DNA of 64,000 bases from Thalia democratica (lineage: Eukaryota). The stretch spans positions 372,001-436,000 of the forward strand of contig OZ241830.1 of the NCBI GenBank assembly GCA_965202585.1, read 5' to 3'. This document shows, one piece after another, positions 44,963 to 64,000 of this stretch (position 1 is its first letter; every line of letters begins with the position of its first letter). The translations under genes and the position numbers were made by a program. A model generated the notes under the pieces. It was not told where the DNA came from. It saw nothing but the letters and a program-made list of their open reading frames with translations, and searched no databases.

Positions 44963-47900
44963 TCACTCACAACTGAACACCAAAGAAGCATCGTTACTAT
45001 TCTCGCAATACTTGGTAGCCTGCTTCTTTGCTTGTATTGGGTCGAGTTTGGTCGATTTGAAAAACCCTTCTTCTACTTCTTCTTCTTCGTTGTACGGAGC
45101 GTTCATCACGAAGACTTCTTCTGCAACGTCTCCCTCGCTGGTGTTCTTGGTGATCTTGCACTTCTCTCCCGAAGACTTCTTCGCGAATACTTCTATCTGG
45201 TTTTGCACTACCACACCGTCTTTCTCAAAACTGTTGCAAAAATTTTTCGTCAAGTATTTACATATTTTTCAATCGTATACATGCTCTAATAATTCGAAGA
45301 ACTATTTAGGAACAAAATCAAAACAAAGCGTAGTTCAAAAAAAACAACTAAAATATTTACTTTGTGCTTTGCTTGTAATTAAAAAAGTATTTTACTATTT
45401 AACAAGCTGTATGAAATACCTTTAACATTTAAAACTTTATTATATTTTACAAAAAACACAAACCCGCATTGATACTGCACACAAGCCTCATGTGACGTCA
45501 TAGTTATTTCCCTGCTTCCAATCAGCTTCGAGCTTTCCGCTTCGGTGGTTTTCGATACCACTGTGACGTCATCGAACGGTGATTCAACTTTCACCTGTGA
45601 ACAGAGTTGGTAAAATGCTAATAGTTACTATGGTAATTCAGCAATGAAGCGTATAAACTTTGGTTTGTTTTAAGTTAGTAATTTCACGCTCGAGTAAACA
45701 AAGCAGAGCTTTTTAACATGTCTGCCTGTGAATTGTTATTTAGTAAAATATAATCAAAACTTGCATGTTTTTAGTTCTTAAATGAATGTAAAGTTTCGTA
45801 TTATACAGACTCGAAAAACAACTTTAGAAATTAGAAACATTTCTTTAGTTGGTTAGATTTAAAATAAGTTAAACCAGCAAGCAGGGAGGAACTGTAAAGT
45901 TAGCTTTATGTTTTACCTTATATGAAGTATTTGAATTTAACTGGAAATTTATTATTTATTGCTAATGATAGAAAAGACACAAACTTTCATGTAACAAGCA
46001 GTGAATTGCTTCAACGAAGGATACCAATTCAGAGGATTTTCTTTCCAATGAAAGAAGATGTTATTTTCATCCGTGAAAATTGTGTTGTGCTCTTTAACTG
46101 GTGTGCTTTCTCTGTTTGTAATAATCATTTACAGTTAGAGAAAAACTAGCACTGAATTAACATTCAGGTCTAAAAAGTTTTTGTTTCTTCAAGTATCTTT
46201 AAAATAAAATACGTTTTATTTTAAGAACGTCTAGTTATACTGTTAAGATATTTTGTATAAAGTTTAAATGTTTAACTTGTGTTTAATTGGTCTTCAGTAG
46301 GTACATTTGTAAGGTTTAAAACATTTATAAAATATTAAAACAATGTCACATTATCTAGTTAACAGTTTTAAAATTAAATAAAAAATATTTAATTATTTAA
46401 ATTGCTGAACTATTTAATTTTTAGACAACTTTATCATTTTCACCTGTAAAATCTGAAATGGTTGTCTAGTTGTTTAGCCTTCATGCAAGAGTATTTGTCG
46501 AAGTAAACGGGTCCCCTCATGTTAGTCAGCTCCTCTCTCGCCGGCAGCTCTATTGTGACGTCATACTTGCTCCTCCTGTACTTCAAAGACTGGAGGTACT
46601 CCTCCTCAGTACCCGGGTCGTCATCGGGAGCCACCAGCAGTTTCTCATCCCCGTTGTACGTTGCTGTGACGTCATAATTGAGTGTTTTACTTGTGTACTT
46701 AATAAAATGATTTTTTATTTTCAGTTTTCTAAATTTTCTTACTTCATGTTTTACAAAACGAACAAAACATGTTGAGAAAAGGTAAACAACAAAGTAGTTT
46801 TAGATGTAGTTAAAGTTAAAAGATAGATATAAATACAATTTTTTTTTGATTTGAAAGTTATCTTACGTTTTGTACCCTTTATATTCAAAGTAAACGTAGA
46901 AAAACAGCAATATTCAAGAAAATGTAAAACCATGTACTTTAGTTAAGTTAATGGTTAGTAAGTATTCAGCACATAGAAACAGGAAACTTTTTGAAACAAA
47001 TAACAACAGGAAACTTTTTGAAACAAACAACAACGTTCAAACCGGTGAAAGTGGCGGTTTGGGCATCGCTGTAATCACAGGGAACAGGGACGCAAGATCC
47101 GGTGTAGGGACTCGTGAGATGATTGTTGACATACCTCCACCTCTGTATGTCCCTGGATTCCCTGGTAACCTGACGGATCCTCACCCCTGAAAGTTGCTGT
47201 CCCTCGCTCATCTCTATCGATGAGTACGCTCGTACTGTTGGGTGTAGTTAATGTTGGAAACATTGTGTATAGAAGTTTAATAGTGTTTCTAGAAAACTAT
47301 CTTGGAGTAACTTTAGAGTATTGATTGATATGCATTAATTTATAACTTTATTGTCATTAATTTTAAAAGTTAGAACTTAATGAGTAAACTTAATGATGAA
47401 CAAATTCTATAAAGTAGGTTCAAAGTATTGTTAGGAAATTATGTGGAAGAAACTTTATAAGATAACGTTTAAACTTTTTAGTTTAAATTTATTCTGTAAG
47501 AAAGGTAGTGTTCCAATTTACGCATTTAAGTAGTTAATAAATGCTTGAAATTTTATAACTAATTGTAAGTATCCAAAAATATCATAAAACATTTTGATTT
47601 GAATTAGTTTTAAACTATATGGTAAAAATAAAAAACATGAATGCAAAACAAAACTTAAAAAAATATGTTTGTTTTAATTAAAACTAACTATAACAAAACT
47701 AACAATTTTTTTTTGTTTTTAAATATAATTGTAATTAAACCAACAATTAATATTGCTATCACTGTAGTAGAATGTTAAAGTAAACGAACTTTTGGTGTAG
47801 CATATTTTTTGTATTTCGGTAGCCAGTGCCAGGTACCTGAATTTATCTACTTGAGGGATATTTGCTGAAAGAAGTGGAATTTTTCCCTTGCTTGATGCCT

Positions 47901-50231
47901 ATAAATTACTTGTAATTAAATAATATTCAATTTTTTTAGTACAAATTTAACAATGTAAATTCTTAAAAGCTAAGTTGTTGTAGTTAAAATTTTACTATGT
48001 TATACATAGTAAATAGTGCGTTCATAAAACTTTTTAATTGTTAATATTTAGAGAACTTAATTTGCAAAAAGTTTTGCTTTTTCTTTATAACGGTAAACTT
48101 GAAAAAAAATTATGAGAGTTTTCAATAAAATTAATACTTTTTACTAACAGAGAGGTCTTGCTTTTCTCTCCAGTATCCCTGGTGTTCATCCAACATGTAC
48201 AATCTCACTTTATTCTTCTCTTTTCTCAGTGCTATCTCGTTCTTGTAGAGTCGAACTCGAATCTGGATGAAATCTTTATTATAAGCTTTATAAGAAAACA
48301 TTAAACACCTGTTCGAAATATGCAAATACATAATGTTTTTTGGCTTTAAAAAATTAATTTTACATTTTCATCTATAGATTTATAAATTTTAACAAACTAG
48401 ATTAAATATATTAAACAACTACATAATAAAGAAAAAACAAACATTTTGCAACTTGAGCATCATGTTTCCTTGTCGATATTTACTTTCTATCCGGAAGATG
48501 GCGTAAATGCGCATCGGTTTCCTCTTAGTACTAAAAAACTCTTCATTCGACAACAAGTTTGCTGATTGGAGGCGTGTGTCGATGAACGGCACTGCTGTTT
48601 TTATCTGAACAAATATATTAGGTTTGAATTTGTTTTGTTAATGTAAACTAAGAAAACATTTGATAGTAAGTAATACTATTGAGTATTGATAATTTACTTT
48701 ATACACCACGCGCTTATATTAAAGAGCTTACTATACAATTAATACTTATTTTTCAAGTACAAAAAGTGTAGTTTAAAGATGAAAAGTTAAAGCTAAGTAG
48801 ATATTGTACCAACAAAAAAAAAAGTACAAACTGTTGTAGTTTTTTATAAGATGATCTTTTTGCTTATATTAGTTTGAAACAGAACATTTAAGTTTTGCAC
48901 ATTTGTTTTATAAAATAAAACAACTCACCCATCCTTGCACGGATTGCCCTCTCTCATTGAAGTAGGAGTTACTTTCCACGTCAACTTCCACAACCGCGTT
49001 CAGTCTCTCACTGACATGCTTCTGTGTACTCACAGGTCTGAACAACCTCTTCGTACTTGTTCTGTACTCCTGAAATTTCGGCATCCTCTGCAGGTACACA
49101 TCCATGTACACAGCTCCACCGAAGTCCTTCGTTTCTACTATCTGTAATGAACTTTTTTTTAAAACTTAGTTGGTAAATATTTTATTTATTCTTTTACTAG
49201 TTTGGTAAGTTTGATGAAACCAATCGAAACCTGGTAGTGGAAAAAGCAGTATGATTTCTCTGTATTTTATTAACCAGCTCTTTACAACTATAGTTAATTA
49301 AGTAAAAAATTATTTTAATTATATTCTTAAACTAGCTTTAGAAGAAATAAAAAAAAATCTTAGATGACTACATAAATAAGTATTAAACACGTATTTCGAA
49401 CTTATCAAATGGACTTCAGGCTATCATAATATAAAGATAGAATTAACTAACCTTAATCGTAGGAACAATTTTGTTGTTTTTGTCGTAAAATCTCAGTGGG
49501 ACATGTCTGAGGCTGCCCACATTAACCGAATAATACCCCTCGTCGTCACTTTTGCCTAGCAACCTGGGTCCCCTCGCAATCATGACGTCACTGAGCTTTG
49601 TAAAGTTCCCCCCTGCTTCCATGATCATCACTCTGGTAAATTTGTTAAAATTTTGTCGTAATCGTTTACATGGCTTTAATAATCAAAAACTTTAAACTAA
49701 AATAAAATACCAAAACTCCCACAAAAATAAAATTAAACAATATAATTAATTTAAACCTTCCGGTGACGATAGTATTTTTTTCCTTGTTGCATTCCACACA
49801 CCCACATTTGGTAACGACATTCACAAGTACTGTTGAGTTGCCTGAAAAAGTTAATTAGAGTGTTAACAATTGTTTGTCAAAAAAAAGTTTTATTTTTAAA
49901 TATTTAAAAATTTTAGATTGTTGCCTTTAATTTTATGAAACTTTACGCATAAATTACATTATTATTATAATTCTAACGTAATAGAACAACTTTTATAAAA
50001 TATTTTTAATAAATAATAGAAAAATAGTTTGTAATTTTCAACCTTTACAGAAAACTTCTCTTTCAATTTGCTCCGAAGCCCCGCAACATTCAAGGGGATC
50101 CCCCTTCTTTTGCGTGGGGCAGGTTACAGTAGGGCACGCCCCAACATTGATGACGTAATCACTCCCGTCGGCGCGTTTGCATGACGACGGAAGGACTATC
50201 TCGTTCACTATTGGTTCCTCGTTGCACGTCA
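44963..50231 (-). CDS. CILP-like: CILP-homologous C-terminal region (post-Ig Cys-rich segment through the CILP C-terminal part), 12 exons
   Basis: Colinear with human CILP1 as recalled: [18 protein letters not shown]; [28 protein letters not shown]; [26 protein letters not shown]; CYTKIRAY/CFVKVRAY; [18 protein letters not shown]; [18 protein letters not shown]; HFRFY/HFRFY; [18 protein letters not shown]; [26 protein letters not shown]; SLVFSC/ALTFNC. Confidence 0.88.
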
Positions 50232-53200
50232 CTGTGACGCAACAGTTGTTCAAGTATTCATTGAAAAATAAATTACTTTACGAGCTGTTTTTTACGTTTT
50301 GAAACCACAAAAACAACTAAAGGAATAAAAAATACTGCAATTTAGCACAAACTAATAGCTGATAAAACCATTCTAAAATATTTTATTAATCAAGCTTAAA
50401 TAAGTTAAAAACTTTTTAGAGTATGATGGTAGTTTAAAAAAAATCTTTAGTTTTTTTTTTATTGTTTTTAAGTTATGCTACTATTAATAAGAATGTTTAA
50501 CAAGATAAATAATAGAGTTTAATTCGTTTGGTAGTAAAAAAAAAAGTCGAATTTCAATCGAGGTCATAATTAGATTATTTGTGTAAGTGTTTTTACAATC
50601 CAAACTATGATTAAGCATATAAATTAAGTGTCATACTAGAATAATAACAAATTTAAATTGTTATTATTATATATTCCTGTGAAATTGTTTCGCTAGGATC
50701 ATTTTTTAACAAACGATTAAATTTGTATTTAGGTTAGTTTCATACTATATCTTTTATCAGAAGAATGTACTATCGTTGAATCAACAATTAGTGACACAGT
50801 TTTTTAATAAACCAAACTCGTTCTAACCAGCTGGGGTCTGGCAACCAAGTTTGCCATTGTCGCCATAAGCACACCTCTGTGTCCTAGGACAGTTGGTAGA
50901 CGTGCAAATTGTCTTTCCTTTGTTGCACCTGCACAGTTTCCTGCACTTCTCCGTGTAGTGGGTCTCTCCGTCCTGAAAATTAACATTCGATAGTCTTTTA
51001 TCTTAATTTTTGTATATTTCAACGTCCAAGGCTTTTTTGCAAGGTAACAAGTTTTGTTTCATTCACAGTTTTACAGACAAAGCAACACAAAAGTGCCCCT
51101 TCAGTGTCAGAATGCTTGAAAAGTTATAAAGTAGTTTTAAAAGAGAAATGCTCTGTAGAAGGTCATAAGTTGGAAAAAGAATCAAAGATTTTGTAAAAGT
51201 GTTTAGACCCTGAACAAAATTGAGCTAAACCAACATTAAGTAAATACCAACTGTGCATTTTAAACAAAAAACATTAAAACTTGTATATTAGTAGAAACCT
51301 TGTAACAGTATCTACTATAAAAGAAATATAAAAACAGTACATAAATATTTAATATGAAAGCCCTATAATAACATCCATTATAAACGAAGTACGAAAATGA
51401 TATTCAAACATTTAATATGAAAACCTTAAGTAAATACCAACTGTGGATTTTAAACAAAAAAATATTGAAACTTTTACAATGGTAAAAAACTTGTAATAAT
51501 ATCTACTAAAAAAAAAAAATAAAAATAATATTCAAAATTTTTAATGTGAAAACCTTATAATAATATCCATTATAAACACATCCACATCCAGTGTCTTCAG
51601 CTACACATTCTCCACCTGATAGCAAGTACCCTTCGTCGCATTCGCAACCTGACAAATTAGTTTGTTTAGTATAAATCCAACTGGTTGTTTTAACTAACAT
51701 CCTGTTAACTATTTTTTTGTAATAATTTGTAATAATGTTTGTCAAATATATTTGTTCGTTGTTGCAGTTCAGTGTTTAAATTATATTCTTTAAAAAGTGT
51801 TTTAAATATTAACTATAAGATCTAAGAAAAATAAAAGTTGAAGACTAAGATTTTTTCCTTACTCAAAGTTCTGTTCAAAGTACATGTTAAGATAACAATG
51901 GGTTCAGATGTGTTTTAAGATAATTGTATTTTTTTCTAAGGTAAAAGAATCAGTTGTAGCAATGGCTAAAAATAAAAAACATAAACATGTTATAACAGTC
52001 TTCAACGTAGTTTTAGGTAGTTGAGTTTAAATTAATCATAAAAAGAACTAAATAGTTAAAAAAAACTTTCAAAATATTTGTGTAAAACCTTCAACGCAGG
52101 GATCTGGACAGTTTTCCTCACTTCTCGGATCACTGCAAGTTCTTGGACACGCTGATGCACAAATACTGTAGTGAGAATTCCTTCCGCACGGTAGCGCTGT
52201 GAAATAAAATCAAAATTAATATCTAAATCAGTACGGTATTTGACTCTTTATAAACGCAGGTTTTTATTTTAAAGCAAACTTAGTTGTAAAAAAAAAAGAA
52301 ACAAAACGCTGTAACGTTAAAATTTTTTAAAAGTAGCTTAACAGCTTTATTGATACAAACAAGTTATTTTAAACTAACGGTTGTCAAGCATGTCTCTCCA
52401 GTCGCAAACTTTAATGCCGAGTTGCTGACACTGCATCGCGTAGGTTTCAACTGACTTCACCAATGTGAAGTTCTCACCACTAAAGGCGCACATATCGTGT
52501 ACACAGTTCTATAAAAAAAAATAACTTGCTGAACAAAAGGAATAAAACCAGAGTTAATGCATGTACTTATGTTAACAGACGTTGCAATGTCTGAAAAAAG
52601 AACTACTCTTTTAGGAGAAAACTTTTTAAGTTAACTAAGAAAGAAAAGTTTTTTTTACTATTTTGTAGAAAGCTCGAAAGAAATTATTAGATAAACTTAC
52701 GACAACTTGAGATTTTGAATTTTATAACAAACAAACATAGAAATAAATTTCCGGGTTTAGCTGCTGGTGACAGAAACCGAAACAGCCATTTTCCTGGTTG
52801 ATGATCCCGCACTGTTGCCCGTACCTGGCGCGTTGCGTCCACCCGCACGAATCTACAACCCCTCCTGCGTCCCTCTTGCATCTGTGACGTCATTGTCGTT
52901 ACGTCACAATTGAAAGTTTGTAAAAAACTAAAGTCTATAACTTACTATTTAATATGTTTGAAAAATTGGAATCTTAGGGGTAAATTCAAATTAAGAAAAG
53001 TATAAAGTATACAAATCTTGCTTGTGTAATAAAATAGTTTATTAGTACTATAAAATAAATTTTTATAAACAAAAACTTTAAGTTGAAAGGAAATATTTAG
53101 AAGATATAATACACAAACTCTTTTTGTGAGTTGATCTGGTAACTATCTCCAAATAAGGTCATGTCTTCAGTTGTGGAGCCGTTTCCCCTGATGACAAAAT

Positions 53201-56200
53201 CATCATTAGGATTTCCGTTCGCATTTCCGCATAAACCTAAATAAAAAATTATAAGTTTATAAAATTTTTAAGTTTTCAAAAGATAAGATTAGACTTATTT
53301 TTATTAAACAGACAATTATATCCGAAAACTTTTCACTTGCAATATTGTTTACAAACTAAATGCAAACAAAAACCTTCAACGGCCCCGGAATAATCACTGG
53401 AAACCCCAACTTCGAGCAAATGGTCCCCATCGTACCTGACCGTCAACCCGAAACTGGTCAGTATTCTCACAATGCGGCCCTGCAGCCCAATCTCAAGTCC
53501 GTGTTTTTGCAGGCTTCCCCACGGAAAATTGATTGAAACCCCGTTTTTCTATTGGTTTTAATATTGAAATTTAGTACATGAATTATGTTTTAAATAATTT
53601 TATACTGAATAATAATTGTTAAACCTGCAGTTTTGTAACGCACAAAATGGTAATAAGTTTATTTGAAGAAACGTTTTTATTTATTATATTCGTACAGCAT
53701 TTAATTCAAATTAACTAGCAATTTTATTTAGCAAATTTAAAGAAAGCTTAAAAGAAGAACTAAGTAAGCTGTTAGTATCTAAACTTATAAACTATTTTAA
53801 TTTATAATTAAAATAAGCTAAAACACGAGAGTTCAACAGAACTGTTGTTTTATTGTACCTTTTCATAATCATTTTCAAAAGAAACAATAGAAACAACATA
53901 CAAGGATCCTAGGTCCCTTCCTGAGTTCGAGGACGTAGTTAGGAATCCTGACAGTAGCTTTCTTCAACCAGGTACCAATCATAACACCGAATCTGTACTC
54001 GTTCTCTGTCTGTTTGAATACAATTATTTTGTTTAATGTAAAACAAGAAATTAGTTTATAAATGATAGAATCTTTTGTTGGTATATGATTGCTAACCTAT
54101 GCTTTTTCATTTTTAATTAGTTTATCTTTTTTTTGCTTTCAAAACTAACTTCAACTTTGAAATTAGTGAGGAATTTTCCTTCTTCTGTCTCCAATACATC
54201 TTCCCTGACTTTTACGAGATCGTACAAGCATTTACCCTGGTAATCGAACTGGGTTCCATCAAACGAATTGTAGTGGGGATCTCCTGACAGTGAACACCAT
54301 CTCTGTTGCCCGTAGTTTCCTAAATAAATTATATTTTATTTTTTCTGTACTTGGAAATGTTAAGTTTTATTGATAGAGGAAGGTATCTATTATATAACTT
54401 TTAATACAAAACTTTGATAGTTGATTGGTAAAATTAGTTACTTAACTGTTCCGTCTTTATATATTGTGAAGCTTCTTATTTAGCTAAATATTATTTATAA
54501 TTTATAAGTTTTCGACTAAAAAACCGAAATTAAGTATTATTTATTTAAAATTCAACGAAAATACGGTAAAACACATTTAAACACAATCTTTACACTTTAT
54601 CTTTATTACGTTTACACCTTATTACATCTAAAATTTAAAGATAATGTAACATTTTGTCTTTTTCAATAAAAAAAAAAGTTGCAATTGTTTTTATCAAATC
54701 AAAAAGTAGGAATTTCATCAATCCTCGAAATATTAAACGCATATTAGTTATATTTATATGTTTAATTGCCTCAAACAAATCAAACCAACTGGAACAAATA
54801 GGCATTGCATCACTCCACGAAAATTACAAGGAATAATTATAGTTGTTTATTTATACATATTTTTTACTTAAATCAAACCAACTGGAACAAATAGGCATTG
54901 GGTCACTCCAAACACCATTCTGCATACAGACAAGTTCATGCTTGCCAATCATCGAGTATCCGTACGCGCACTCAACATACAACCTGTCCCCCTGCATGTA
55001 CGGTCCCGTTGATTTTATCATCCCTCTCGTTGGCACCTCTGGTGTCGGACATTCCAGCACTGTTGGAAGTTTAGTAAGTAGTTTCATAAGTATGCTTGGT
55101 TGTTGTTTTGATACAACGAAATTTTTACTATTTGAAATAGAAACCTTGTTACAATACATTCGAACGTTATAGGATGTACTAAATGTTTTGTGGATAAAGA
55201 GCTCTATGATAAAGTTTTATATTATATAAAATCTGTTAATTTAATTAAAAAGTAAACTAGATAAAGTATAACACATATATAACATAGGAGTTCATTAAGT
55301 CAGTAGTATAGATAATGAAAAACACGGTTTAGTTTTAAAAAGAATAAAAACGCTTACGTTTGAGAGTTATATAAAATAAAAAGTACAAGCACCTTTAGTA
55401 ATAGAAAAGATCTATACGCAACAACTGTAATAAAGTTGAACAATGATCAGTACTTACTAATCAGTATTGAAAACTAACAGAGACAGTCAAGTCCTTGTAG
55501 CAGGTATCCTTCTGCGCACGCACAAGTGAAACTTCCAATTGTGTTTGCACAAACTTCCCCTTCATCGCATATGACGTTGCTTGTTTCACATTCATTTATG
55601 TCTGAAAAATGATGAGAATTTTCATCTAAACTGTATTGTTTTTAATGTTGCACTTTGACAACTATGGGTTGACTTAAATTTAAAAATTAAACTATTTTTA
55701 TCATTACATTACTTGTTTCACATTCATTTATGTCTGAAAATGATGAGAATTTTCATTTAAACATTATTATTTTTAAGGTTGCAATTTGACAACTATGGGT
55801 TAACTTAAATTTCAAAATAGAAATTTTCTTTCATTACATTACTTGTTTCACATTCATTTATGTCTGAAAATGATGAGAATTTTCATATATATAAACTTTA
55901 TTATTTTTAATGTTACACTTTGACAACTATGGGTTAAATTAAATTTCAAAATTAAAAATTTTTCTTTCATTACATTACTTGTTTCACATTCATTTATGTC
56001 TGAAAAATGATGAGAATTTTCATATATATAAACTTTATTATTTTTAATGTTACACTTTGACAACTATGGGTTAAATTAAATTTCAAAATTAAAAATTTTT
56101 CTTTCATTACATTACTTGTTTCACATTCATTTATGTCTGAAAAATGATGAGAATTTTCATAACTTTATTATTTTTAAGGTTGCACTTTGAAAACTATGGG

Positions 56201-59200
56201 TTAACTTAAATTTCAAAATAAAAATTTTCTTTCATTACATTACTTGTTTCGAATTCATTTATGACTGTGAATGTATTAACGATATTATTGATTAACACCC
56301 GTATGTGTATGAATAAAAAAAAAACATTTACATCTTTTATAGCAAAAAGGTCATTGTTTTAAATGTTAGTCTTCGTCATTTACTAGATAAACAATCTACT
56401 TAACGACAAAACTTTGCCTTTAGTAAATTGTTAAACTTTTTTATTTTACCTTCTAAAAATTTTTCGTCACAAAAAAAAGTACAAAACATATAAATTTCAA
56501 GAACTCCATCACTTATTTAAATTTCAAACAAAATCCAACCATCACAGTAAGACTGAATTCTGTTGGACCAGGTACCATCAGGCCTGCAGGTCAATGTGTC
56601 GCCGGACATGAGTTGGAATCCTGGTCTGCAACTGAACGTGACCGTCGACCCGACCCCGTAACTCCCATCATCGCTTGATTGGGCGAATCCGTTGAACGGC
56701 GCGCTTATCCGGTCACATCTGATCTCTGTTTGATGAATTTTTTTGATTGTATGTAAAAACTGAAAAAAAAAATATTACGGAAAATTCTAAATATGTGATA
56801 CAACAACAAATTAATGTCGTTGTCTCAATAAGAAGACCCGACGTGATGTCTATTGTAACCAATCTAAATTGCTAGGGGTAATTAATTGGGGATAGATATT
56901 TTTAGATAAGATAAATACATCTAAGATACTTAAAAGTCAACAAAAGTTTATTTACAAACATAAAGTAGTCACACGACACACTAACAAAACAACAGTTGAA
57001 CACAAGTAACAAGAAGTATCTTAAACTAAAGAAAACAAAGTATTTCAGATTTAAACTTAAACATTTTATAATACAACATTTCGAGCTTTACCAAACACCT
57101 GATACTGCTACTGCTACTGCAAGTAAAATTCCGTTTTATAAGCACTGAAATAAATGTAACTCCTTTAAGTAAACAATGTTGTTTATTGTTTTAGAAAATT
57201 GTTTTAAGAGTTATAAAAATTGTTTTGGAAAAGCTTGTTTTGAAAATGCTGAAAAATGTTTTGGAAAAGCTTTTATTGTTACAAAAAATTTCATATTTAT
57301 TCACAAGCTTTAAAATACTAAAATGAAATGTTAGTTTCATTACATCGTTTAAGTGCAATTAGACGTTTTATAAGTATAGTTTTTTTCTACATCATTAACA
57401 AAAGTATACAAGTTGATACAACATGTTTATCCTTACAAACTTCAAATTTGTTCAACGAAACTCGTTTAAGTATTTAATTCGTTTATTTTTACGTTACAAC
57501 GTTCTAGTTTATTCAAAATAAACTCAAATAAATATTACAAACCGTCACATTGAGGAGGAGGAGCCCAATTTCCATCATTTTCACACCTAACACTCATGTC
57601 CTCCTCACTACCTTCGAACCCCTCCAAACACTCATACAGGACCTGGTGGTCGTCCAAATACGTGAAGTTGCCGTTCTTTATGTTAGGGGGTTCCCCACAG
57701 TCTATTTCTGTTTGTTTATTGATTGTTGTTTAGAAAGTGTCGTTTTAAATGTCGTTAAAAAATTAAAAGAGTACACTCTCATATAACTGGTAAGATGTTT
57801 TAGTTAATATAAATTCTCAGTGAGAATGGTTTTGGTATTCTAAACTTAGATGCATATACAAAAAGTATGTGTTTTAAGTACAATTATTAACAGTTTTATT
57901 AATTTTTAAAAATGTTCTCAGTAAGTTATTGTCACTTACAGGACTACAAAACTAAACTAAAAAGTTGTTTAGAAAAAAGTAACATGAAATTTAATAGTTT
58001 CAAGTTTATGTTTTTGTTTTAAGTTAATTTTAAAATTACTTTGAAGTGATATATATAAACCAAAAGATGCTTGTAAAATCAGTTAATTTTATGAAAATCT
58101 TGTAAAGTTTAACTTACTGATGCACTTGGGGGGATCTGACCAGTTGCCCTCAAAATCGCATATGACGTCATCGTTACCCTCCATATTGTACCCGTCGTCA
58201 CACTTGTAAACAGCTGATTTCTCGTCGCTGGACAAAACAAACTCAGCGTTCTTCACATTCGGTGGATCCCCGCATTCGATCTCTGTTTAGTTTTTATCTA
58301 GTACACAAACTTCAAATGATAAAAATATCATTCTTATTCTAGTACGTTGAAGTTTTGTATTTGACTGTTTTTTTAAAGCTTTAAAAATGTTACTTAGAGT
58401 TAGAAGTATTACAAGTTCTAAAGTGTAGTATATAAATGTAATGAACGATTTATAAGTTTGTTATACTGTAAATAGCTTTAAAATTTATTGAAAGAATTTA
58501 ATAAATATAATTTCTCCTCTAGAAGTTGAGATATTTTATTAGTTTCCGAAAAATCAAAACGTATAACACTGTAAACAGAATAAACTCTTAAGAACATAGT
58601 TTAGTGCACAGTTTCAATCTTAAACGGTCTAAGACGAAGCTTAATCAAAAAAACAACGTATATAAAAACAGTTTTAGCCAACTTGACTATAAATATTTTA
58701 TGAAGTTTTTCAGTTGAATTAAGATAAATATTTCCTAACCAAAAGTACAAAAGCCAAAAATATAGTAAACAACAACTTGAACCCACCAACGCACTGGGGC
58801 TGATCTTCGTATTTGAAATCTCCGTCTTCATCGCAAACAGCATCATCGGATCCCACCAATTGCTTGCCAGGCTCACAAGACATAAACACCTGATTGTCGA
58901 CGTTGAATTCTTCTTGCGTCACTTCATCGTTGTTCTCGTCTAAGATCAGCACTCCAGGGAAGTCAGGACGCTTGCACAAGATCTCTGTTGGGAGTTTTTG
59001 TTGAGCATTATTTACAAAACGTAAATAGGTATGGTATAATCAAATTAATGTTTTTATGTAGCTTTTTAGATAAAAGAAAACAAAAAAACTCACAAAATAC
59101 TTGTTTCACTTAAATTACACCGATACGTATAGCAGATAAAAATAACAAGTTGGCAAGCGTATGAAAACGTATTGTGTTAATTGTTGAAAGTCTTACAAAG

Positions 59201-62200
59201 CAAAGCTTTTTTAGCTTAAACCACAAAAAATAGTTGACACATTAGGAAGTTTTGAGCAGCCTAAGTATTACAAATATTATAATGTTATTACTGTAACTTT
59301 ATAAGAACAAGAAAAAGTTTTTGTTTGTTTAACTTTACTTGGCTTTTATCATAATTAACACACATATAGAACAAGTAACATAGAAAAATAAACTAAGGTA
59401 TATCTTAAAAACTCAGAAACACTTCTTTTTGGAACAAACCTTCACAAACAGGGAAGTCATTGGAGTAATCGCCGGATTCAGTGCAAGTTACAGTCTCCAG
59501 CGAGGGATCGTTCATCTTGTATCCTCTCAAACAAGAGTACTCGATCGAATCTCCGATTGAATTGAATCCATCAACGTTCTCAGGATTCCTTGTTGAGTTG
59601 GGGACATCTGGCACTTCTCCGCATTTTATCTCTGAAATACAAGCTTGTTTTTGCAACTTAATTTGTTAGTTTTTGTTCTACTACAGCAGTTCTTTAAAAA
59701 CTTGTAGTTTGTGGTTCTTATTAGAAGCTAAAAAAAAAACCACGAAAAATCTATTTAGATCTTAAAATCTCTTCACACATTTAGTAATTTTTACGCTTGT
59801 TTAAGCCTCAAGATGCGTTTGATACAAAAAAGATCGTAAAAAAAAACAACAACACGCACCTTCACAAGTAGGATATTCTTCAATGTCGAAAGTTCCATCC
59901 TCAGTGCAATTATAAGGTCCAGGGAATCCTTTCAACTCGTAACCTTCATCACAATAAAAAGTGACGTTTTCAAATACTTCATAATCATCAGCTAGCGGAT
60001 CGTAATAACCGTTTGTTATATTTTCCGGCTGCTCACAGAACACATCGGAGTAATCATTTCCACTAAAATCAAAACTTGGGTCTTCTGTGTAAAAAAATAT
60101 TAAAAAGGTTAAGGTTGTCTTTTTTTATAATTTTAATACTTTATCAATATGTTAATAAACATAAAAAGTTTGAAATTATTAATATTTTTCACGCTAAAAA
60201 TCTAAATGGCATAATCAACCAAATTACTTTTACAATTAGGATTCGGTCCCTGTATTTCAACCATCCCGTCTGCCGTACAAGTACCGTTGGACGTCCCATT
60301 TACAATCAGCCCTGTGGGACATTTGAAGTGGACCACATCTCTGTACTTGATGGTCTCAACATTAACCGAACTGTTCGGACTGTTTGTCACATTCACTTGT
60401 TTGTCGTCAAACATCGGTAAGTCGCATTCAATTTCTGTGAGAGAGTTAAATAAAATAATTAGATTTTTGTATATGCTTAATTACTTAAAAAATACTTATT
60501 TTTTATTAGCATTGAACGTGGCCTGATTTTTAGTAAGTTGCAGCTGTAGATTTACTTAATACCAAAAATAAAGCATTTTTTCACAAACTACAAATGGAGT
60601 TATAAAGTCAGCACTGTGTTGACATTTTGTTTCAAAGTATTTGAGCAAAAGTTTAATTTGGTTCGGTGTATTAGAAATCAGATATTATATATTTCAAAAT
60701 AGTATTTAACTTATAAGTATAATTGTCAACCTTCGCAAGTGTCGTCTTGATTTCTCGTATAACCTTCTTCGCATTGGCAAATGAAACTGCCAACAGAGTT
60801 CATGCAAACTTCATTTGATCCACAAACGTCTTCATCACATTCATTTATATCTGAATAAATGTTTATAAATAAAAACAGAAATAATAACATTTTATAACAT
60901 CTATAACATTAAGAATTAAAAAACTTTGATTTTGTAAATTTCAGCACGTTAAACCTTTCAGAGTCTTACAGTCTACTTTAAAGTTGATATTAAAACATAC
61001 TTACATAAATTTTGAATTATAAATATTCTCACCATTGCAAGTAGGCATGTCTTCGTGTACATCTAGTTGTTCATCTTCAGTGCAAACAGAAGAATCTGAT
61101 CCGTCCAACAAGAATCCCTCATCACACTCGAAATCAACTACGTCGTTGTAACTGACAAATGATGGAAGTTGTATTTGTTCGTTGTTGTTTGTTGCTTTCA
61201 TGTTTGCCATCATCGGCACTTTGCACTTGATTTCTGAGATTTTGTTTATAATTAGCAAACTTGAAAATTACACTTTACTTAATAACTGTAAGGTTCATTA
61301 TTTCATGCATGTAAATAAAATGATTGGATATTCGTTTAAAACAAAAAAATAATTGTGAAAGCTTAAGTGGGTTTAAAGCATGGAAAATCCAATAGACTTG
61401 ATTTCCATCTTGTTTTATGTAAATTTAAAAAACTTTTAAACTTACATTTTTAAAACTTTTAATTAAGACTTAACACTTTATATTAATAAAATTAACTTCG
61501 GCTACAGAATTATAAAAACATCCGAATACACCAGAAGAACAACCTATACATTCTCCTTTTGTGGGTGTAAAAGTTTCATCTCTCTGACAAACAGAAGTTT
61601 CGTCGCCAACGTATTTGTACCCCTCGTCACACGTCAGGTGTATCACGCTATCTAGCGGTAACATTTCTACAGATTCATCGAACTTGTTTCCTTTATCGTC
61701 GACAATCAGGATTCCTCCGTCGAAAATCGGGAGGAGACACTCGATCTCTGAAAGTTTATGAAACTAGTTGAAGAAGTTTGCAGTGAGTTGTTGACACTGA
61801 TGAAAAACATGCTCGTATGTGTTTGTAACGAGTATGAATAGTTTCTGTACTTGATTGTAATTTTTATATTTTAAGCAAAGCTTTAAAACATTTGTTAGTT
61901 TTTTATATTCATTTATAATATGGTTTTTAAGTTAAAAATCTATTTTTGATTGTGCCTCGTTAAAGTTTAAAAAACTAAAGGTTATAAAAATATTTAGAGT
62001 TTCATTTTTAAGTATTTTTATATAATATTTTTTGTTTAGTATCTAATTAATAAGTATTCTACTAACCAATACATTGTGGAAAAAACTTCAATTTGAATCC
62101 TTCATCCAAACAAACAGCAGATTCACTTCCCACAAACTTGTGCTTATCATCCGGACATCCGAAAAACACTTCCCTGTTGTACGCGAAAGTAGGGTTTTCC

Positions 62201-63719
62201 CCACGATCGAGAACAACGCCCTGGTCGTCCAACACTTGCACTTTTTCGCCCAATCTCGGGTACAGACATCTTATTTCTATTGGTTTAAAGCTTTAGTTTT
62301 AATCATATACTTACGTTTTTCTGTGTATGATTATGGCGGCGTCGGTGATATTAAATTTTATTACATATTGATTATATACAGTTTGAAACAAGTATAATGT
62401 GTTAGTGGTTTACTGAATCAATATTTTTGGTTAGTTTTGACGTCAATTACAACATAAATATTAAACTCAACAAAACATTCGACTTGATTAGAAATTAGTC
62501 AAAAATAATTAATTCGTTTTTAATTTTTTTATTACATTTTTTTTTTCTGCTTTAGTTTTATTCTTGTAGTTTTTCAAATCAGCCTATACAGCAACAAGTC
62601 ACAAACAAAATCAGTTCAATCACATTCATTCCATGCATTTTAATAGAAAATTTCAAATAATTTGTGTTACAGAGGTCAAACAATTACACTTTTCTAAGTT
62701 TTCTTACCTTTTTTGAAGTTCGTTGCAGTACTGTGATTCAAGTTTTTTTTTCAAGTTAAGTATCATTGAAATGTTAAGTTTCTTTACTTAAATTTTTTAA
62801 CGAACGCTTCAAATGGTTACAACTTTAGGTTTGTAATTTTGGTTTATGTACATGTAAACTAATAAAAAAAGCTTTGAACATTAATAAGACGAAATAGATT
62901 AAAAGGACAAAATTTGTAAAGCTTAAAGTTGTTTTTGTCGTATATTTTAATTTTAAAAGTAAACATTTAAAACCAAGTTAAGATTTTATGAAGAATCTAA
63001 TATGTGTTATATACCAGCACACTGGGGTAGATCCTGGTGGTGATAATCAAAATTCATGTCCTCATCGCACGACGCGTTCATGCTTCCGACCAATTCCCAT
63101 CCCTCATCATTACACTCGAACTTCACCACATCTCCATACTTGTAAGTGTCATCTTCACTCTGCACATTTCCATTTTCATCCACTACCACAACTCTATCAT
63201 CGACTAACACTGGGTACTTACACACTATTTCTGTTAAAGTTTGTTAATTTTTACGTAGTTACCTTTGAACGGTGAACAAAAATTTCTGCTGTTTTCTAGA
63301 TAAAATATGAAGTGTTTTTGAATTTCAAGAACACTGATTTATGTTGTGGTAACTAACTTTACTTGACTTTCCAAATAAGTGAAAACAAAGTTATTCGAAC
63401 AAATTTTTCTAAAAGTTTACTTTTGTAAGATTGATTACAGTTCTTTTACACATTCTAAACCAAAATGTAAAAAAACTCTTATAAATTGTCATACCTTCAC
63501 AACTGGGATACTCGTCAATATCAAAAACAGTTTCTTTAGTGCAATTATAAGGACCTGGATATCCATTTAACTTATATCCTTCATCACAGAAGTAAGTAAT
63601 GTTTGAATAAATATCATAAAATTCATTTAATGGTTCGTAATAACCATTTGTTATATTATTTGGTGGTTCGCAAAACTCGTCAGAGTAATCGTTACCAGTG
63701 AAATCGAAGTCTGGGTCTT
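44963..63719 (-). CDS. CILP-like: Large extracellular mosaic protein: sushi(13)-cbEGF(2)-VWD-C8-TIL-TILa-CILP C-terminal region; 5'-incomplete (continues beyond 64000)
   Basis: 36 GT-AG exons in consistent phase (minus strand, high to low): 63495-63719, 63015-63230, 62067-62276, 61544-61747, 61033-61233, 60731-60850, 60228-60434, 59860-60084, 59440-59631, 58787-58984, 58118-58282, 57543-57707, 56540-56725, 55479-55601, 54883-55059, 54150-54319, 53902-54009, 53374-53548, 53119-53236, 52737-52881, 52379-52508, 52089-52196, 51554-51648, 50828-50972, 50043-50231, 49757-49841, 49452-49632, 48929-49141, 48443-48604, 48149-48262, 47790-47898, 47043-47234, 46444-46663, 45985-46111, 45464-45594, 44963-45230. 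Sum 5999 nt, one open frame ending at TGA 44963-44965. Confidence 0.88.
46978..47031. repeat. 27-bp tandem duplication in intron
   Basis: AACAGGAAACTTTTTGAAACAAA(T/C)AAC x2. Confidence 0.9.
50828..52881 (-). CDS. C8 + TIL + TILa (VWC-like) domains, 5 exons
   Basis: C8: [29 protein letters not shown]...[14 protein letters not shown]: [18 protein letters not shown]...[19 protein letters not shown]. TILa: [28 protein letters not shown]. This is the FCGBP/tectorin/zonadhesin-type repeat unit. Confidence 0.9.
51237..51577. repeat. About 190-bp degenerate tandem duplication reaching into the TIL exon 3' end
   Basis: TAAGTAAATACCAACTGTG.ATTTTAAACAAAAAA at 51237 and 51427; ATCCATTATAAAC at 51373-51385 and 51565-51577. 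Confidence 0.8.
53119..54319 (-). CDS. von Willebrand factor type D (VWD) domain, 4 exons
   Basis: [29 protein letters not shown]...[39 protein letters not shown] carries the VWD hallmark motifs GDPHY-x-x-FDG and GLCGN. Confidence 0.93.
54777..54910. repeat. 41-bp direct duplication of a sushi exon 3' end plus donor
   Basis: 54777-54817 vs 54870-54910: 31 nt identical, 39/41 overall, offset 93 nt. Confidence 0.9.
54883..63719 (-). CDS. Array of 13 sushi/CCP exons plus 2 calcium-binding EGF exons (all phase 1-1 modules)
   Basis: Each sushi exon has the four-Cys C-x-x-P...C..G(Y/F).L.G...C...C pattern, e.g. [16 protein letters not shown]...[22 protein letters not shown]. cbEGF exons are [31 protein letters not shown] (60731-60850) and [33 protein letters not shown] (55479-55601). 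All exon lengths are multiples of 3. Confidence 0.92.
55581..56267. repeat. Tandem array, about 5.2 units of 128-137 bp, each containing the cbEGF exon acceptor and its first codons
   Basis: Units start at 55581, 55713, 55843, 55979, 56116 and 56244 (TTGTTTCACATTCATTTATGTCTGAAAAATGATGAGAATTTTCAT...; the last copy is diverged). Confidence 0.95.
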
Positions 63720-64000
63720 CTGTTTTTGTAATGGTAATGGTTTTTCAAAATTTAGTATTTATACTAAAAAAATTATGAAGCTTAAAAAGCTGTTGATATG
63801 AAAAGGTAACTTATTATTCCAAAAAAGTATTATTTTAAAAACTAATTGAACGGTGTTTTCTTTTATACTGAAAAGAGCCCAACTAAGTAAGTAAAGATAC
63901 ATACGCTTTAAAAGTTTAACAAACGATTCAGAAACAAAAAGAAACAATGGGCCATACTCTTAATGAAATTTGTTATATGATTTTACATTTTACAAATTTA

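What the first reader, a model, noticed from the sequence alone, without database searches (positions are those of the whole stretch)
44963..63719. Sushi/EGF array-VWD-C8-TIL-TILa fused in frame to the CILP C-terminal region: a mosaic matrix protein architecture I do not recognise
Seen in sequence: one phase-consistent 36-exon reading frame joins 13 sushi, 2 cbEGF and an FCGBP/tectorin-type VWD assembly to about 660 aa colinear with CILP1/2. Established: vertebrate CILPs start with WxxW, TSP1 and Ig domains, and VWD-C8-TIL blocks drive polymerisation in mucins, VWF and tectorin. Inference: this is a lineage-specific polymer-forming extracellular protein that displays a CILP module, a candidate component of the tunic, mucous feeding net or a cartilage-like tissue. 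It could inform the origin of chordate cartilage matrix proteins.
Basis: partly seen in the sequence, partly recalled or inferred. Interest (0 to 1): 0.85.

Follow-up and report, generated by a model that had tools for sequence, protein, structure and literature searches.

The report
Sushi–VWD protein with CILP tail
A pelagic tunicate gene really does join a long array of adhesion-type modules and a mucin/VWF-type assembly module to the tail half of the vertebrate cartilage protein CILP, but this is the 3' part of a still larger gene and an ordinary kind of domain shuffling rather than a new kind of protein.

Summary
On the minus strand, 63719..44963, I rebuilt 36 exons. All have AG/GT borders and they form one open frame of about 2,007 aa. 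Pfam on single exons gives 13 Sushi, 2 calcium-binding EGF, VWD, C8, TIL, TILa, then CILP_5th, CILP_8th and CILP_C in vertebrate order, spanning 663 aa. The TILa/CILP junction (50828/50231) is phase 1 to phase 1 and sits on both domain borders. Its 596-nt intron looks like the others and holds no usable start or signal-peptide exon. Tara Oceans/ENA contigs from relatives carry exons 25-28 and 31-36 with the same borders (exon identity 89-95% without gaps, other sequence 60-79%, dN/dS 0.06-0.22). The CILP-like part is therefore a conserved, working coding sequence.

Three limits remain. No transcript was found, and no relative's contig spans the junction. Exon 1 starts in phase 1 with no start codon, so the gene runs off the window. 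An earlier scan note (s1-317378, whose lower edge equals my exon 3 border) reads the adjoining DNA as SUEL lectin-WxxW-Sushi-CUB-(VWD-C8-TIL)2-EGF2-Sushi27+. A second note (s1-291919) reports another VWD-C8-TIL-CILP locus in this genome; the scan had thus met the combination before.

'Polymer-forming' is not shown. I could not test whether the architecture exists outside this lineage. Verdict: real mosaic matrix protein, a new variant of known kinds, of moderate interest.

The parts
63495..63719 (-). exon 1, Sushi 1 with acidic N-terminal extension; starts in phase 1 (gene continues 5' beyond the window)
   Evidence: Pfam Sushi 27.3 bits; AG/GT borders; no start codon upstream in window
63015..63230 (-). 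exon 2, Sushi 2
   Evidence: Pfam Sushi 33.5 bits
62067..62276 (-). exon 3, Sushi 3 (divergent)
   Evidence: Pfam Sushi 15.5 bits, below cut-off; four-Cys pattern aligned with the others
61532..61747 (-). exon 4, Sushi 4 with a fifth, unpaired Cys at its end
   Evidence: Pfam Sushi 32.9 bits; Cys count
61033..61233 (-). exon 5, Sushi 5
   Evidence: Pfam Sushi 30.9 bits
60731..60850 (-). exon 6, calcium-binding EGF 1
   Evidence: Pfam EGF_CA 36.7 bits; DINEC motif
60228..60434 (-). exon 7, Sushi 6 (divergent)
   Evidence: Pfam Sushi 15.1 bits, below cut-off; four-Cys pattern
59860..60084 (-). exon 8, Sushi 7, 66% identical to exon 1
   Evidence: Pfam Sushi 36.2 bits; identity matrix
59440..59631 (-). 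exon 9, Sushi 8
   Evidence: Pfam Sushi 39.4 bits
58787..58984 (-). exon 10, Sushi 9
   Evidence: Pfam Sushi 34.2 bits
58118..58282 (-). exon 11, Sushi 10
   Evidence: Pfam Sushi 41.4 bits
57543..57707 (-). exon 12, Sushi 11
   Evidence: Pfam Sushi 38.3 bits
56540..56725 (-). exon 13, Sushi 12
   Evidence: Pfam Sushi 47.9 bits
55479..55601 (-). exon 14, calcium-binding EGF 2
   Evidence: Pfam EGF_CA 43.9 bits; DINEC motif
54868..55059 (-). exon 15, Sushi 13
   Evidence: Pfam Sushi 38.3 bits
54150..54319 (-). exon 16, start of VWD, carries a GDPH motif
   Evidence: Pfam VWD profile 1-33, 35 bits; GDPH at residue 959 of the model
53902..54009 (-). exon 17, middle of VWD
   Evidence: fills VWD profile positions about 34-91 between exons 16 and 18; phase-consistent AG/GT borders; no Pfam hit on its own
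53374..53548 (-). exon 18, VWD
   Evidence: Pfam VWD profile 92-139, 24.3 bits
53119..53236 (-). exon 19, end of VWD (GLCGN...DDF)
   Evidence: Pfam VWD profile 137-152; reading
52737..52881 (-). exon 20, first half of C8
   Evidence: Pfam C8 profile 1-27
52379..52508 (-). exon 21, second half of C8
   Evidence: Pfam C8 profile 25-63, 37.5 bits
52089..52196 (-). exon 22, first part of TIL
   Evidence: Pfam TIL profile 1-34, 34 bits
51554..51648 (-). exon 23, end of TIL
   Evidence: Pfam TIL profile 33-53
50828..50972 (-). exon 24, TILa; donor at 50828 in phase 1
   Evidence: Pfam TILa profile 6-55 of 55, 34.5 bits
50232..50827 (-). intron 24, the join between the D assembly and the CILP-like region
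   Evidence: 596 nt, GC 0.24, GTTAGA...CACAG, like the other introns; no ATG exon with a signal peptide able to splice in phase 1
50043..50231 (-). exon 25, CILP_5th domain, symmetric phase 1-1 exon; a second in-phase donor lies 6 nt upstream at 50049
   Evidence: Pfam CILP_5th profile 1-69 of 72, 41.7 bits; 94-95% aa identity in L007/L008
49757..49841 (-). exon 26, CILP-like middle region
   Evidence: phase-consistent; 97% aa identity in L007
49452..49632 (-). exon 27, CILP-like middle region
   Evidence: 94% aa identity in L007 and conserved in L008; no Pfam hit on its own
48929..49141 (-). exon 28, CILP-like middle region
   Evidence: conserved in L007 up to the donor
48443..48604 (-). exon 29 (alternative donor at 48484)
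   Evidence: two phase-consistent solutions; the one given has the commoner GTTTGT donor and CAG acceptor
48149..48262 (-). exon 30 (alternative acceptor at 48285)
47790..47898 (-). exon 31
   Evidence: phase-consistent; its 3' end aligns to L003
47043..47234 (-). exon 32, first half of CILP_8th
   Evidence: Pfam CILP_8th profile 6-75, 28.3 bits; 90% aa identity in L003
46444..46663 (-). exon 33, second half of CILP_8th
   Evidence: Pfam CILP_8th profile 98-166, 31.8 bits; 93% aa identity in L003/L004
45985..46111 (-). exon 34, start of CILP_C
   Evidence: Pfam CILP_C profile 3-41, 29.8 bits; 98% aa identity in L003/L004
45464..45594 (-). exon 35, middle of CILP_C
   Evidence: conserved in L003-L005 up to the donor, then diverges
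44963..45230 (-). exon 36, end of CILP_C and stop codon
   Evidence: Pfam CILP_C profile 117-179, weak; 81-89% aa identity in L003-L006; stop at 44965-44963

Best explanation
Window 63719..44963 (minus strand) is the 3' 18.8 kb of one large gene for a secreted mosaic matrix or mucus-associated glycoprotein of a pelagic tunicate. The part seen here encodes three regions. First, a very acidic rod of 13 Sushi and 2 calcium-binding EGF modules. Second, one VWF/FCGBP-type D assembly (VWD with a GDPH motif, C8, TIL, TILa). Third, joined in frame through a phase 1-1 exon border, a 663-aa region homologous and colinear with the C-terminal half of vertebrate CILP1/2 (CILP_5th ... CILP_8th, CILP_C). Shown: the exon structure, the domain identities, purifying selection on the CILP-like exons, and the lack of any separate start for the CILP part. 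Inferred: the join arose by shuffling of phase-1 exons. The protein is probably exported and built into an extracellular structure. There the Sushi/EGF rod would serve as a calcium-dependent binding arm, and the D assembly would mediate disulfide-linked assembly or, after GDPH cleavage, covalent attachment, as in FCGBP and mucins. The CILP tail would act as a matrix-binding end; its biochemical role is unknown even in vertebrates.
For: The gene model has 36 exons, all GT..AG, and one frame. There is a strong exon/intron GC contrast. Pfam hits fall in the expected order on single exons. At the junction, the TILa profile ends at 55/55 three residues before the donor, and the CILP_5th profile starts at position 1 at the first full codon after the acceptor. 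Both sides are phase 1. The intron is of typical size and composition. No ATG plus signal-peptide exon lies in the intron, and there is no Met in exon 25. In relatives' metagenome contigs (L003-L008), tblastn alignments break at my exon borders. Exon identity is 89-95% with no gaps, against 60-79% with many gaps outside exons, and dN/dS is 0.06-0.22. There is no hydrophobic C-terminal tail, and the Sushi/EGF part has 198 Asp+Glu against 56 Lys+Arg in 952 aa.
Against: No transcript or cDNA evidence was found. No contig from a relative reaches from exon 25 back to exon 24 (L008 stops 350 nt upstream of exon 25). Read through without splicing, exon 24 ends in a stop after one codon, and AATAAA occurs twice in intron 24, so a shorter product without the CILP tail is possible. 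Exons 26-31 have no Pfam hit as single pieces. The functional roles are inferred from other proteins. GDPH cleavage cannot be predicted from sequence. A single D assembly without a cystine knot or CGLC motif is not known to make polymers.
Confidence: 0.75

Rival explanations
1. There are two neighbouring genes on the same strand: a Sushi/EGF/VWD gene ending at exon 24 and a separate CILP-like gene starting at exon 25, perhaps as an operon resolved by spliced-leader trans-splicing, which tunicates use. On this view the fused frame is an artefact of joining exons on paper.
For: No transcript data. Unspliced read-through of the exon 24 donor meets a stop at once, and intron 24 holds two AATAAA. 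Earlier notes report trans-splicing in this genome.
Against: Exon 25 has no Met. The first in-frame Met lies in exon 27, past the CILP_5th domain, and no signal peptide follows it. Intron 24 holds no ATG exon that could supply a signal peptide in phase 1. The phases match, both domain borders are exact, and the intron is typical. The same adjacency is reported at a second locus (unverified).
Confidence: 0.1
2. One gene gives two products. Intronic polyadenylation or intron retention after exon 24 yields a short form without the CILP tail, and the fused form is a minor isoform.
For: Immediate stop on read-through, and AATAAA at 50463 and 50387.
Against: Such signals occur by chance in DNA with 24% GC. 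The CILP exons are under strong purifying selection, so they are used, and they have no other way to be translated and secreted.
Confidence: 0.1
3. The locus is a decaying or unexpressed pseudogene, or the join is an assembly chimera.
For: Nothing positive; only the lack of expression data.
Against: All 36 exons are intact and there is no N run in the window. dN/dS is 0.06-0.22 and exons have no indels against relatives. An independent assembly (L008) reproduces exon 25 plus 312 nt of intron 24.
Confidence: 0.03

Closest known systems
Vertebrate CILP1 / CILP2 (cartilage intermediate layer proteins)
   Same: The last 663 aa match the Pfam domains built on the CILP C-terminal part, in the same order: CILP_5th, then an unassigned stretch of about 330 aa, then CILP_8th and CILP_C. 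Like CILP it is a secreted matrix-type protein.
   Different: In vertebrates the fifth domain follows WxxW/CysD, TSP1 and Ig domains. The N-terminal half binds TGF-beta through TSP1, and the protein can be cleaved into halves (PMC11567009, PMC3195396; domain order from my own knowledge). Here TILa precedes the fifth domain. No TSP1 or Ig was found in any of the 24 upstream exons, and no RX[KR]R site exists in the visible part. The C-terminal part is split over 12 exons.
FCGBP / zonadhesin / alpha-tectorin type D assemblies
   Same: A VWD-C8-TIL-TILa unit with a GDPH motif at the start of VWD.
   Different: Those proteins repeat the unit many times and lack Sushi arrays and a CILP tail. Only one unit lies in this window.
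Gel-forming mucins and VWF
   Same: The same D-assembly building block. Mucin CysD (WxxW) domains are also shared with CILP and with oikosin 1 of larvacean houses (PMC3195396), so a link between CILP and mucus-type proteins already exists at domain level.
   Different: No Ser/Thr/Pro-rich domain, no C-terminal cystine knot and no CGLC motif in the part seen. The N-terminal D1-D2-D'D3 arrangement could not be examined.
Large Sushi/EGF mosaics such as SVEP1 (polydom) or CSMD proteins
   Same: Long arrays of one-exon, phase 1-1 Sushi modules interspersed with calcium-binding EGF modules.
   Different: No VWA or pentraxin domain in the window, and the tail here is a D assembly plus a CILP region. 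Sushi 1-9 lack the usual Trp before the last Cys.

Membership tests
CILP family (vertebrate CILP1/2) | CILP_5th domain | tested here: met
   Exon 25, PF23708, 41.7 bits against cut-off 27, profile 1-69 of 72
CILP family (vertebrate CILP1/2) | CILP_8th and CILP_C domains, in that order after the fifth domain | tested here: met
   PF23730 on exons 32 and 33 (28.3 and 31.8 bits, cut-off 27). PF23599 on exon 34 (29.8 bits) and, weakly, on exon 36
CILP family (vertebrate CILP1/2) | WxxW, TSP1 and Ig domains directly upstream of the fifth domain | tested here: not met
TILa precedes exon 25. None of exons 1-24 hits TSP_1, an Ig family or Mucin2_WxxW, and there is no WxxW motif.
CILP family (vertebrate CILP1/2) | Furin-type cleavage between N- and C-terminal halves | tested here: not met
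   No RX[KR]R in the 2,007 aa
Gel-forming mucin / VWF | Several N-terminal D assemblies with CGLC motifs | tested here: inconclusive
   One D assembly and no CGLC in the window. The 5' part of the gene lies outside the window
Gel-forming mucin / VWF | Ser/Thr/Pro-rich central domain | tested here: not met
   Richest 60-aa stretch has 19 S+T+P
Gel-forming mucin / VWF | C-terminal cystine-knot dimerisation domain | tested here: not met
   The C-terminus is CILP_C. No cystine-knot family was hit
FCGBP / zonadhesin / tectorin type | VWD-C8-TIL-TILa unit | tested here: met
   Exons 16-24
FCGBP / zonadhesin / tectorin type | Tandem repetition of the unit | tested here: not met
   A single unit in the window
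FCGBP / zonadhesin / tectorin type | Autocatalytic cleavage at GDPH | not testable with these tools
   The motif is present at residue 959. Cleavage needs a protein experiment

The most novel reading that the evidence does not exclude
The CILP C-terminal module began as the tail of a giant mucus/VWF-type protein. Pelagic tunicates would still keep a WxxW domain, D assemblies and the CILP tail in one gene, and keep a VWD-C8-TIL-CILP core in at least two paralogues. Vertebrate CILP1/2 (WxxW-TSP1-Ig-CILP tail) would then be trimmed descendants, so a cartilage matrix protein would derive from a filter-feeding mucus or net protein.
Probability: 0.15. Interest if true: 0.6.

Novelty: new variant of a known kind. 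Interest (0 to 1): 0.4.

Why it matters
CILP is studied as a vertebrate cartilage and heart matrix protein, and the function of its C-terminal half is unknown. A conserved tunicate gene carries that half behind a mucin/VWF-type assembly module. This shows that the module is older than vertebrate cartilage and can work in another context. Mucins, CILP and a larvacean house protein already share the CysD/WxxW domain (PMC3195396), so the finding adds a second domain-level link between CILP and mucus-type proteins. It gives a concrete gene for expression and proteomic work on salp-like feeding nets or tunic. Novel domain combinations are common in matrix proteins of invertebrate deuterostomes (my own knowledge), so the find is useful rather than startling.

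Tried and rejected
1. Full-library HMMER search with exon 25 alone: only three weak bacterial hits (SPOR, SprB and similar), which are spurious.
2. Word-index protein search with the exon 25 ORF: no candidates.
3. JGI metagenome scans with exon 25 and exon 33. The first found nothing. The second gave two contigs of 65-70% GC with bacterial ORF density, rejected as chance matches to an acidic stretch.
4. Viral-contig scan with exon 25: nothing.
5. ESM Atlas look-ups with exons 33 and 25: no meaningful neighbours. Single exons are too short for this tool.
6. PDB sequence search with exon 25: no CILP structure.
7. AlphaFold2 on exon 25 without an alignment: mean pLDDT 44, unusable, so I ran no fold search.
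8. Pfam at E up to 10 on exons 26-31 and 35: no CILP-related hit.
9. My first automatic splice model over-extended several exons. I replaced it by hand curation.
10. Frame choice at 47296-46969: the frame reading 'NTIKLLY...GHTEVE' was rejected. The other frame hits CILP_8th and is the one conserved in L003.
Full-length eukaryotic homologues, and therefore the spread of the architecture across species, stayed untested.
12. Literature searches for CILP in tunicates or other invertebrates, or together with VWD, found no description of such a protein.


Full report
**What is there.** The window is very AT-rich (GC 0.22-0.33), and GC rises over 44-64 kb. Stop-free segments on the minus strand between 63744 and 44966 read as a series of disulfide-rich modules. 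I listed splice candidates and tried an automatic chain, which over-extended several exons. I then curated every border by eye against frames and domain ends.

The result is 36 exons from 63719 to the stop at 44965-44963. Every intron is GT..AG, and there is one frame of 2,007 aa. An alternative exon 29/30 junction gives 2,001 aa; both are phase-consistent. Exons have GC 0.32-0.54 and introns 0.16-0.29. Intron lengths are 124-938 nt.

- Exons 1-5, 7-13 and 15 are Sushi. Eleven score above the gathering score and two are weak. All 13 have the four-Cys pattern, and only the last four keep the usual Trp.
- Exons 6 and 14 are EGF_CA with a DINEC start.
- Exons 16-19 tile the VWD profile (positions 1-33, a gap filled by exon 17, 92-139, 137-152).
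- Exons 20-21 tile C8, exons 22-23 tile TIL, and exon 24 is TILa (profile 6-55 of 55).
- Exon 25 is CILP_5th (profile 1-69 of 72, E 1.2e-10).
- Exons 32-33 tile CILP_8th (6-75 and 98-166 of 168).
- Exons 34 and 36 hit CILP_C (3-41 and 117-179 of 200).
- Exons 26-31 and 35 give nothing as single pieces, even at E up to 10.

The CILP-like stretch is 663 aa. All Sushi and EGF exons, and exon 25, are symmetric phase 1-1 exons, the classic substrate of exon shuffling.

**The junction.** The TILa profile ends three residues before the donor at 50828. The CILP_5th profile begins at the first full codon after the acceptor at 50231. Both sides are in phase 1. Intron 24 is 596 nt with GC 0.24 and a GTTAGA...CACAG pair, like its neighbours.

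Exon 25 has no Met, and the next in-frame Met is in exon 27. I searched intron 24 for an ATG-started exon that could splice in phase 1. It offers nothing better than a leader of four to seven residues, which cannot be a signal peptide. A separately translated, secreted CILP-like protein is therefore unlikely.

Two points count against the fusion. Read-through of the donor stops after one codon, and two AATAAA lie in the intron. A short isoform therefore cannot be excluded.

**Relatives.** Searches with exon 25 alone failed. A search with the last exon found three short ORFs in ENA assemblies. Their contigs come from Tara Oceans and other marine metagenomes. I used my last protein search on a composite alignment of five junction-near exon segments. 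It found contigs L007 and L008.
- tblastn of my model shows exons 25-28 (L007, L008) and 32-36 (L003-L006) at 81-98% amino-acid identity. The alignments break at my exon borders and decay into stops beyond them.
- L003 also aligns to the last bases of exon 31.
- At DNA level, exon columns are 89-95% identical with no gaps. Non-exon columns are 60-79% identical with many gaps in five contigs. L006, which extends mainly into the 3' untranslated region, is about 93% identical both inside and outside exons.
- Nei-Gojobori estimates give dN/dS of 0.06-0.22 at dS of 0.13-0.48.

The CILP-like part is thus a conserved, selected coding sequence in several related taxa, and the frame choice in exon 32 is confirmed. 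L008 carries 350 nt upstream of exon 25 but does not reach exon 24. The junction itself is therefore not tested in relatives, and adjacency in such close relatives would in any case not separate one gene from two. All contigs found are genomic; no transcript was found.

**The 5' end.** Exon 1 starts in phase 1. The 280 nt left before the window edge hold no convincing start or signal-peptide exon. The scan's earlier notes include s1-317378, a 50.8-kb finding that overlaps this window at 62067-64000 and runs over the edge. It reads 'SUEL lectin-WxxW-Sushi2-CUB-(VWD-C8-TIL)2-EGF2-Sushi27+'. Its lower limit, 62067, is exactly the 3' border of my exon 3, so it is very probably the 5' continuation of the same minus-strand gene.

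If so, the whole protein has about 39 Sushi modules, three D assemblies and an N-terminal WxxW (CysD-type) domain, with the CILP tail at the far end. I could not read that DNA, so this remains a lead. Another note, s1-291919, reports a second locus in this genome with TSPN, four Ig domains, VWD-C8-TIL and a CILP C-terminal half. If true, VWD-C8-TIL-CILP is a recurring core in this lineage.

**What it probably does.** The visible protein has these features:
- no hydrophobic tail;
- no furin-type site;
- no Ser/Thr/Pro-rich region;
- no CGLC motif;
- no cystine knot.

The Sushi/EGF part is strongly acidic (198 D+E against 56 K+R) and has one unpaired Cys, in exon 4. The VWD begins with GDPH, the motif at which FCGBP and some mucins cleave themselves (my own knowledge).

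My best reading is a secreted structural glycoprotein of an extracellular layer. The Sushi/cbEGF rod would be a calcium-dependent binding arm. The D assembly would serve for disulfide or post-cleavage covalent attachment. The CILP tail would be a matrix-binding end. Only export and modular structure are reasonably grounded; the rest is inference. 'Polymer-forming' is not supported by the part seen.

**Comparison with what is known.** Vertebrate CILP1 is a secreted matrix glycoprotein that can be cleaved into halves. The N-terminal half binds TGF-beta1 through its TSP1 domain, and the C-terminal half is the so-called pyrophosphohydrolase homologue (PMC11567009). Its N-terminal CysD/WxxW-type domain is shared with gel-forming mucins and with oikosin 1 of larvacean houses (PMC3195396).

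The tunicate protein passes the tests for the CILP C-terminal domains. It fails the test for the WxxW-TSP1-Ig context next to them. It is therefore not a CILP orthologue in architecture, but a different mosaic that carries the CILP tail. It contains an FCGBP-type unit but not the repeats, and a mucin/VWF-type block but none of the other mucin hallmarks.

I found no paper describing CILP-tail proteins in tunicates or joined to VWD. I could not query domain-architecture databases, so 'undescribed' is not the same as 'absent elsewhere'.

**Verdict.** This is a real, conserved, probably much larger mosaic gene. It is a new variant built from known modules, and interest is moderate (0.4). The most novel reading still open is that the CILP tail originated in a mucus/VWF-type giant protein and that vertebrate CILPs are trimmed descendants (probability about 0.15).

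Noticed in passing
window, 14 sites: 4752, 10374, 16323, 16393, 22628, 44948, 45493, 45564, 46556, 46667, 49583, 52885, 58163, 62438: The CRE-like palindrome TGACGTCA occurs 14 times against 0.33 expected from shuffles. Nine sites lie in or next to this gene, two of them right at acceptors (TGACGTCACAG| before exons 20 and 33). Most of the 14 sites extend one-sidedly to TATGACGTCAC. The motif sits in different reading frames, so it is not a protein constraint. Cause unknown.
   Followed up: partly
window 44963-63719, all 35 introns of the gene: Donor sites have T at position +3 in 22 of 35 introns (GTTAGT, GTTTGT), instead of the usual A or G. Acceptors are mostly ACAG or TCAG. Other notes on this genome report the same dialect.
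   Followed up: partly
window 55580-56267; 54777-54817; 51258-51577; 46978-47034: Copies of exon borders sit in the adjoining introns. There are 5.2 tandem copies of a 137-nt unit holding the acceptor and 5' end of exon 14, and a 95% copy of the 3' end of exon 15. There are also several copies of the exon 23 donor region, and a 27-nt duplication just past the exon 32 donor.
   Followed up: partly
window 50043-50049: Two GT donors 6 nt apart, both in phase 1, end exon 25. Using the upstream one would drop two residues (Cys-Lys). Relatives keep both.
   Followed up: no
window 63495-63719 and 59860-60084: Exons 1 and 8 are 66% identical Sushi modules. Both have an acidic, Tyr-containing N-terminal extension (…GNDYSD…) that looks like a tyrosine-sulfation context, and they point to an internal block duplication.
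   Followed up: no
L003-L008 (ENA: Tara Oceans PRJEB4352 and other marine assemblies): Marine metagenome assemblies hold low-coverage genomic contigs of at least two or three relatives of this animal (dS 0.13 to 0.48 against the window). These could serve for comparative checks of other genes of this genome.
   Followed up: partly
window 27371-27620 and 34443-34711: These are the only GC-richer, stop-poor patches (GC 0.42-0.47) in the otherwise gene-poor 45 kb downstream of the gene. One reads as a Ser/Arg/Pro-rich stretch on the minus strand. I did not examine them.
   Followed up: no
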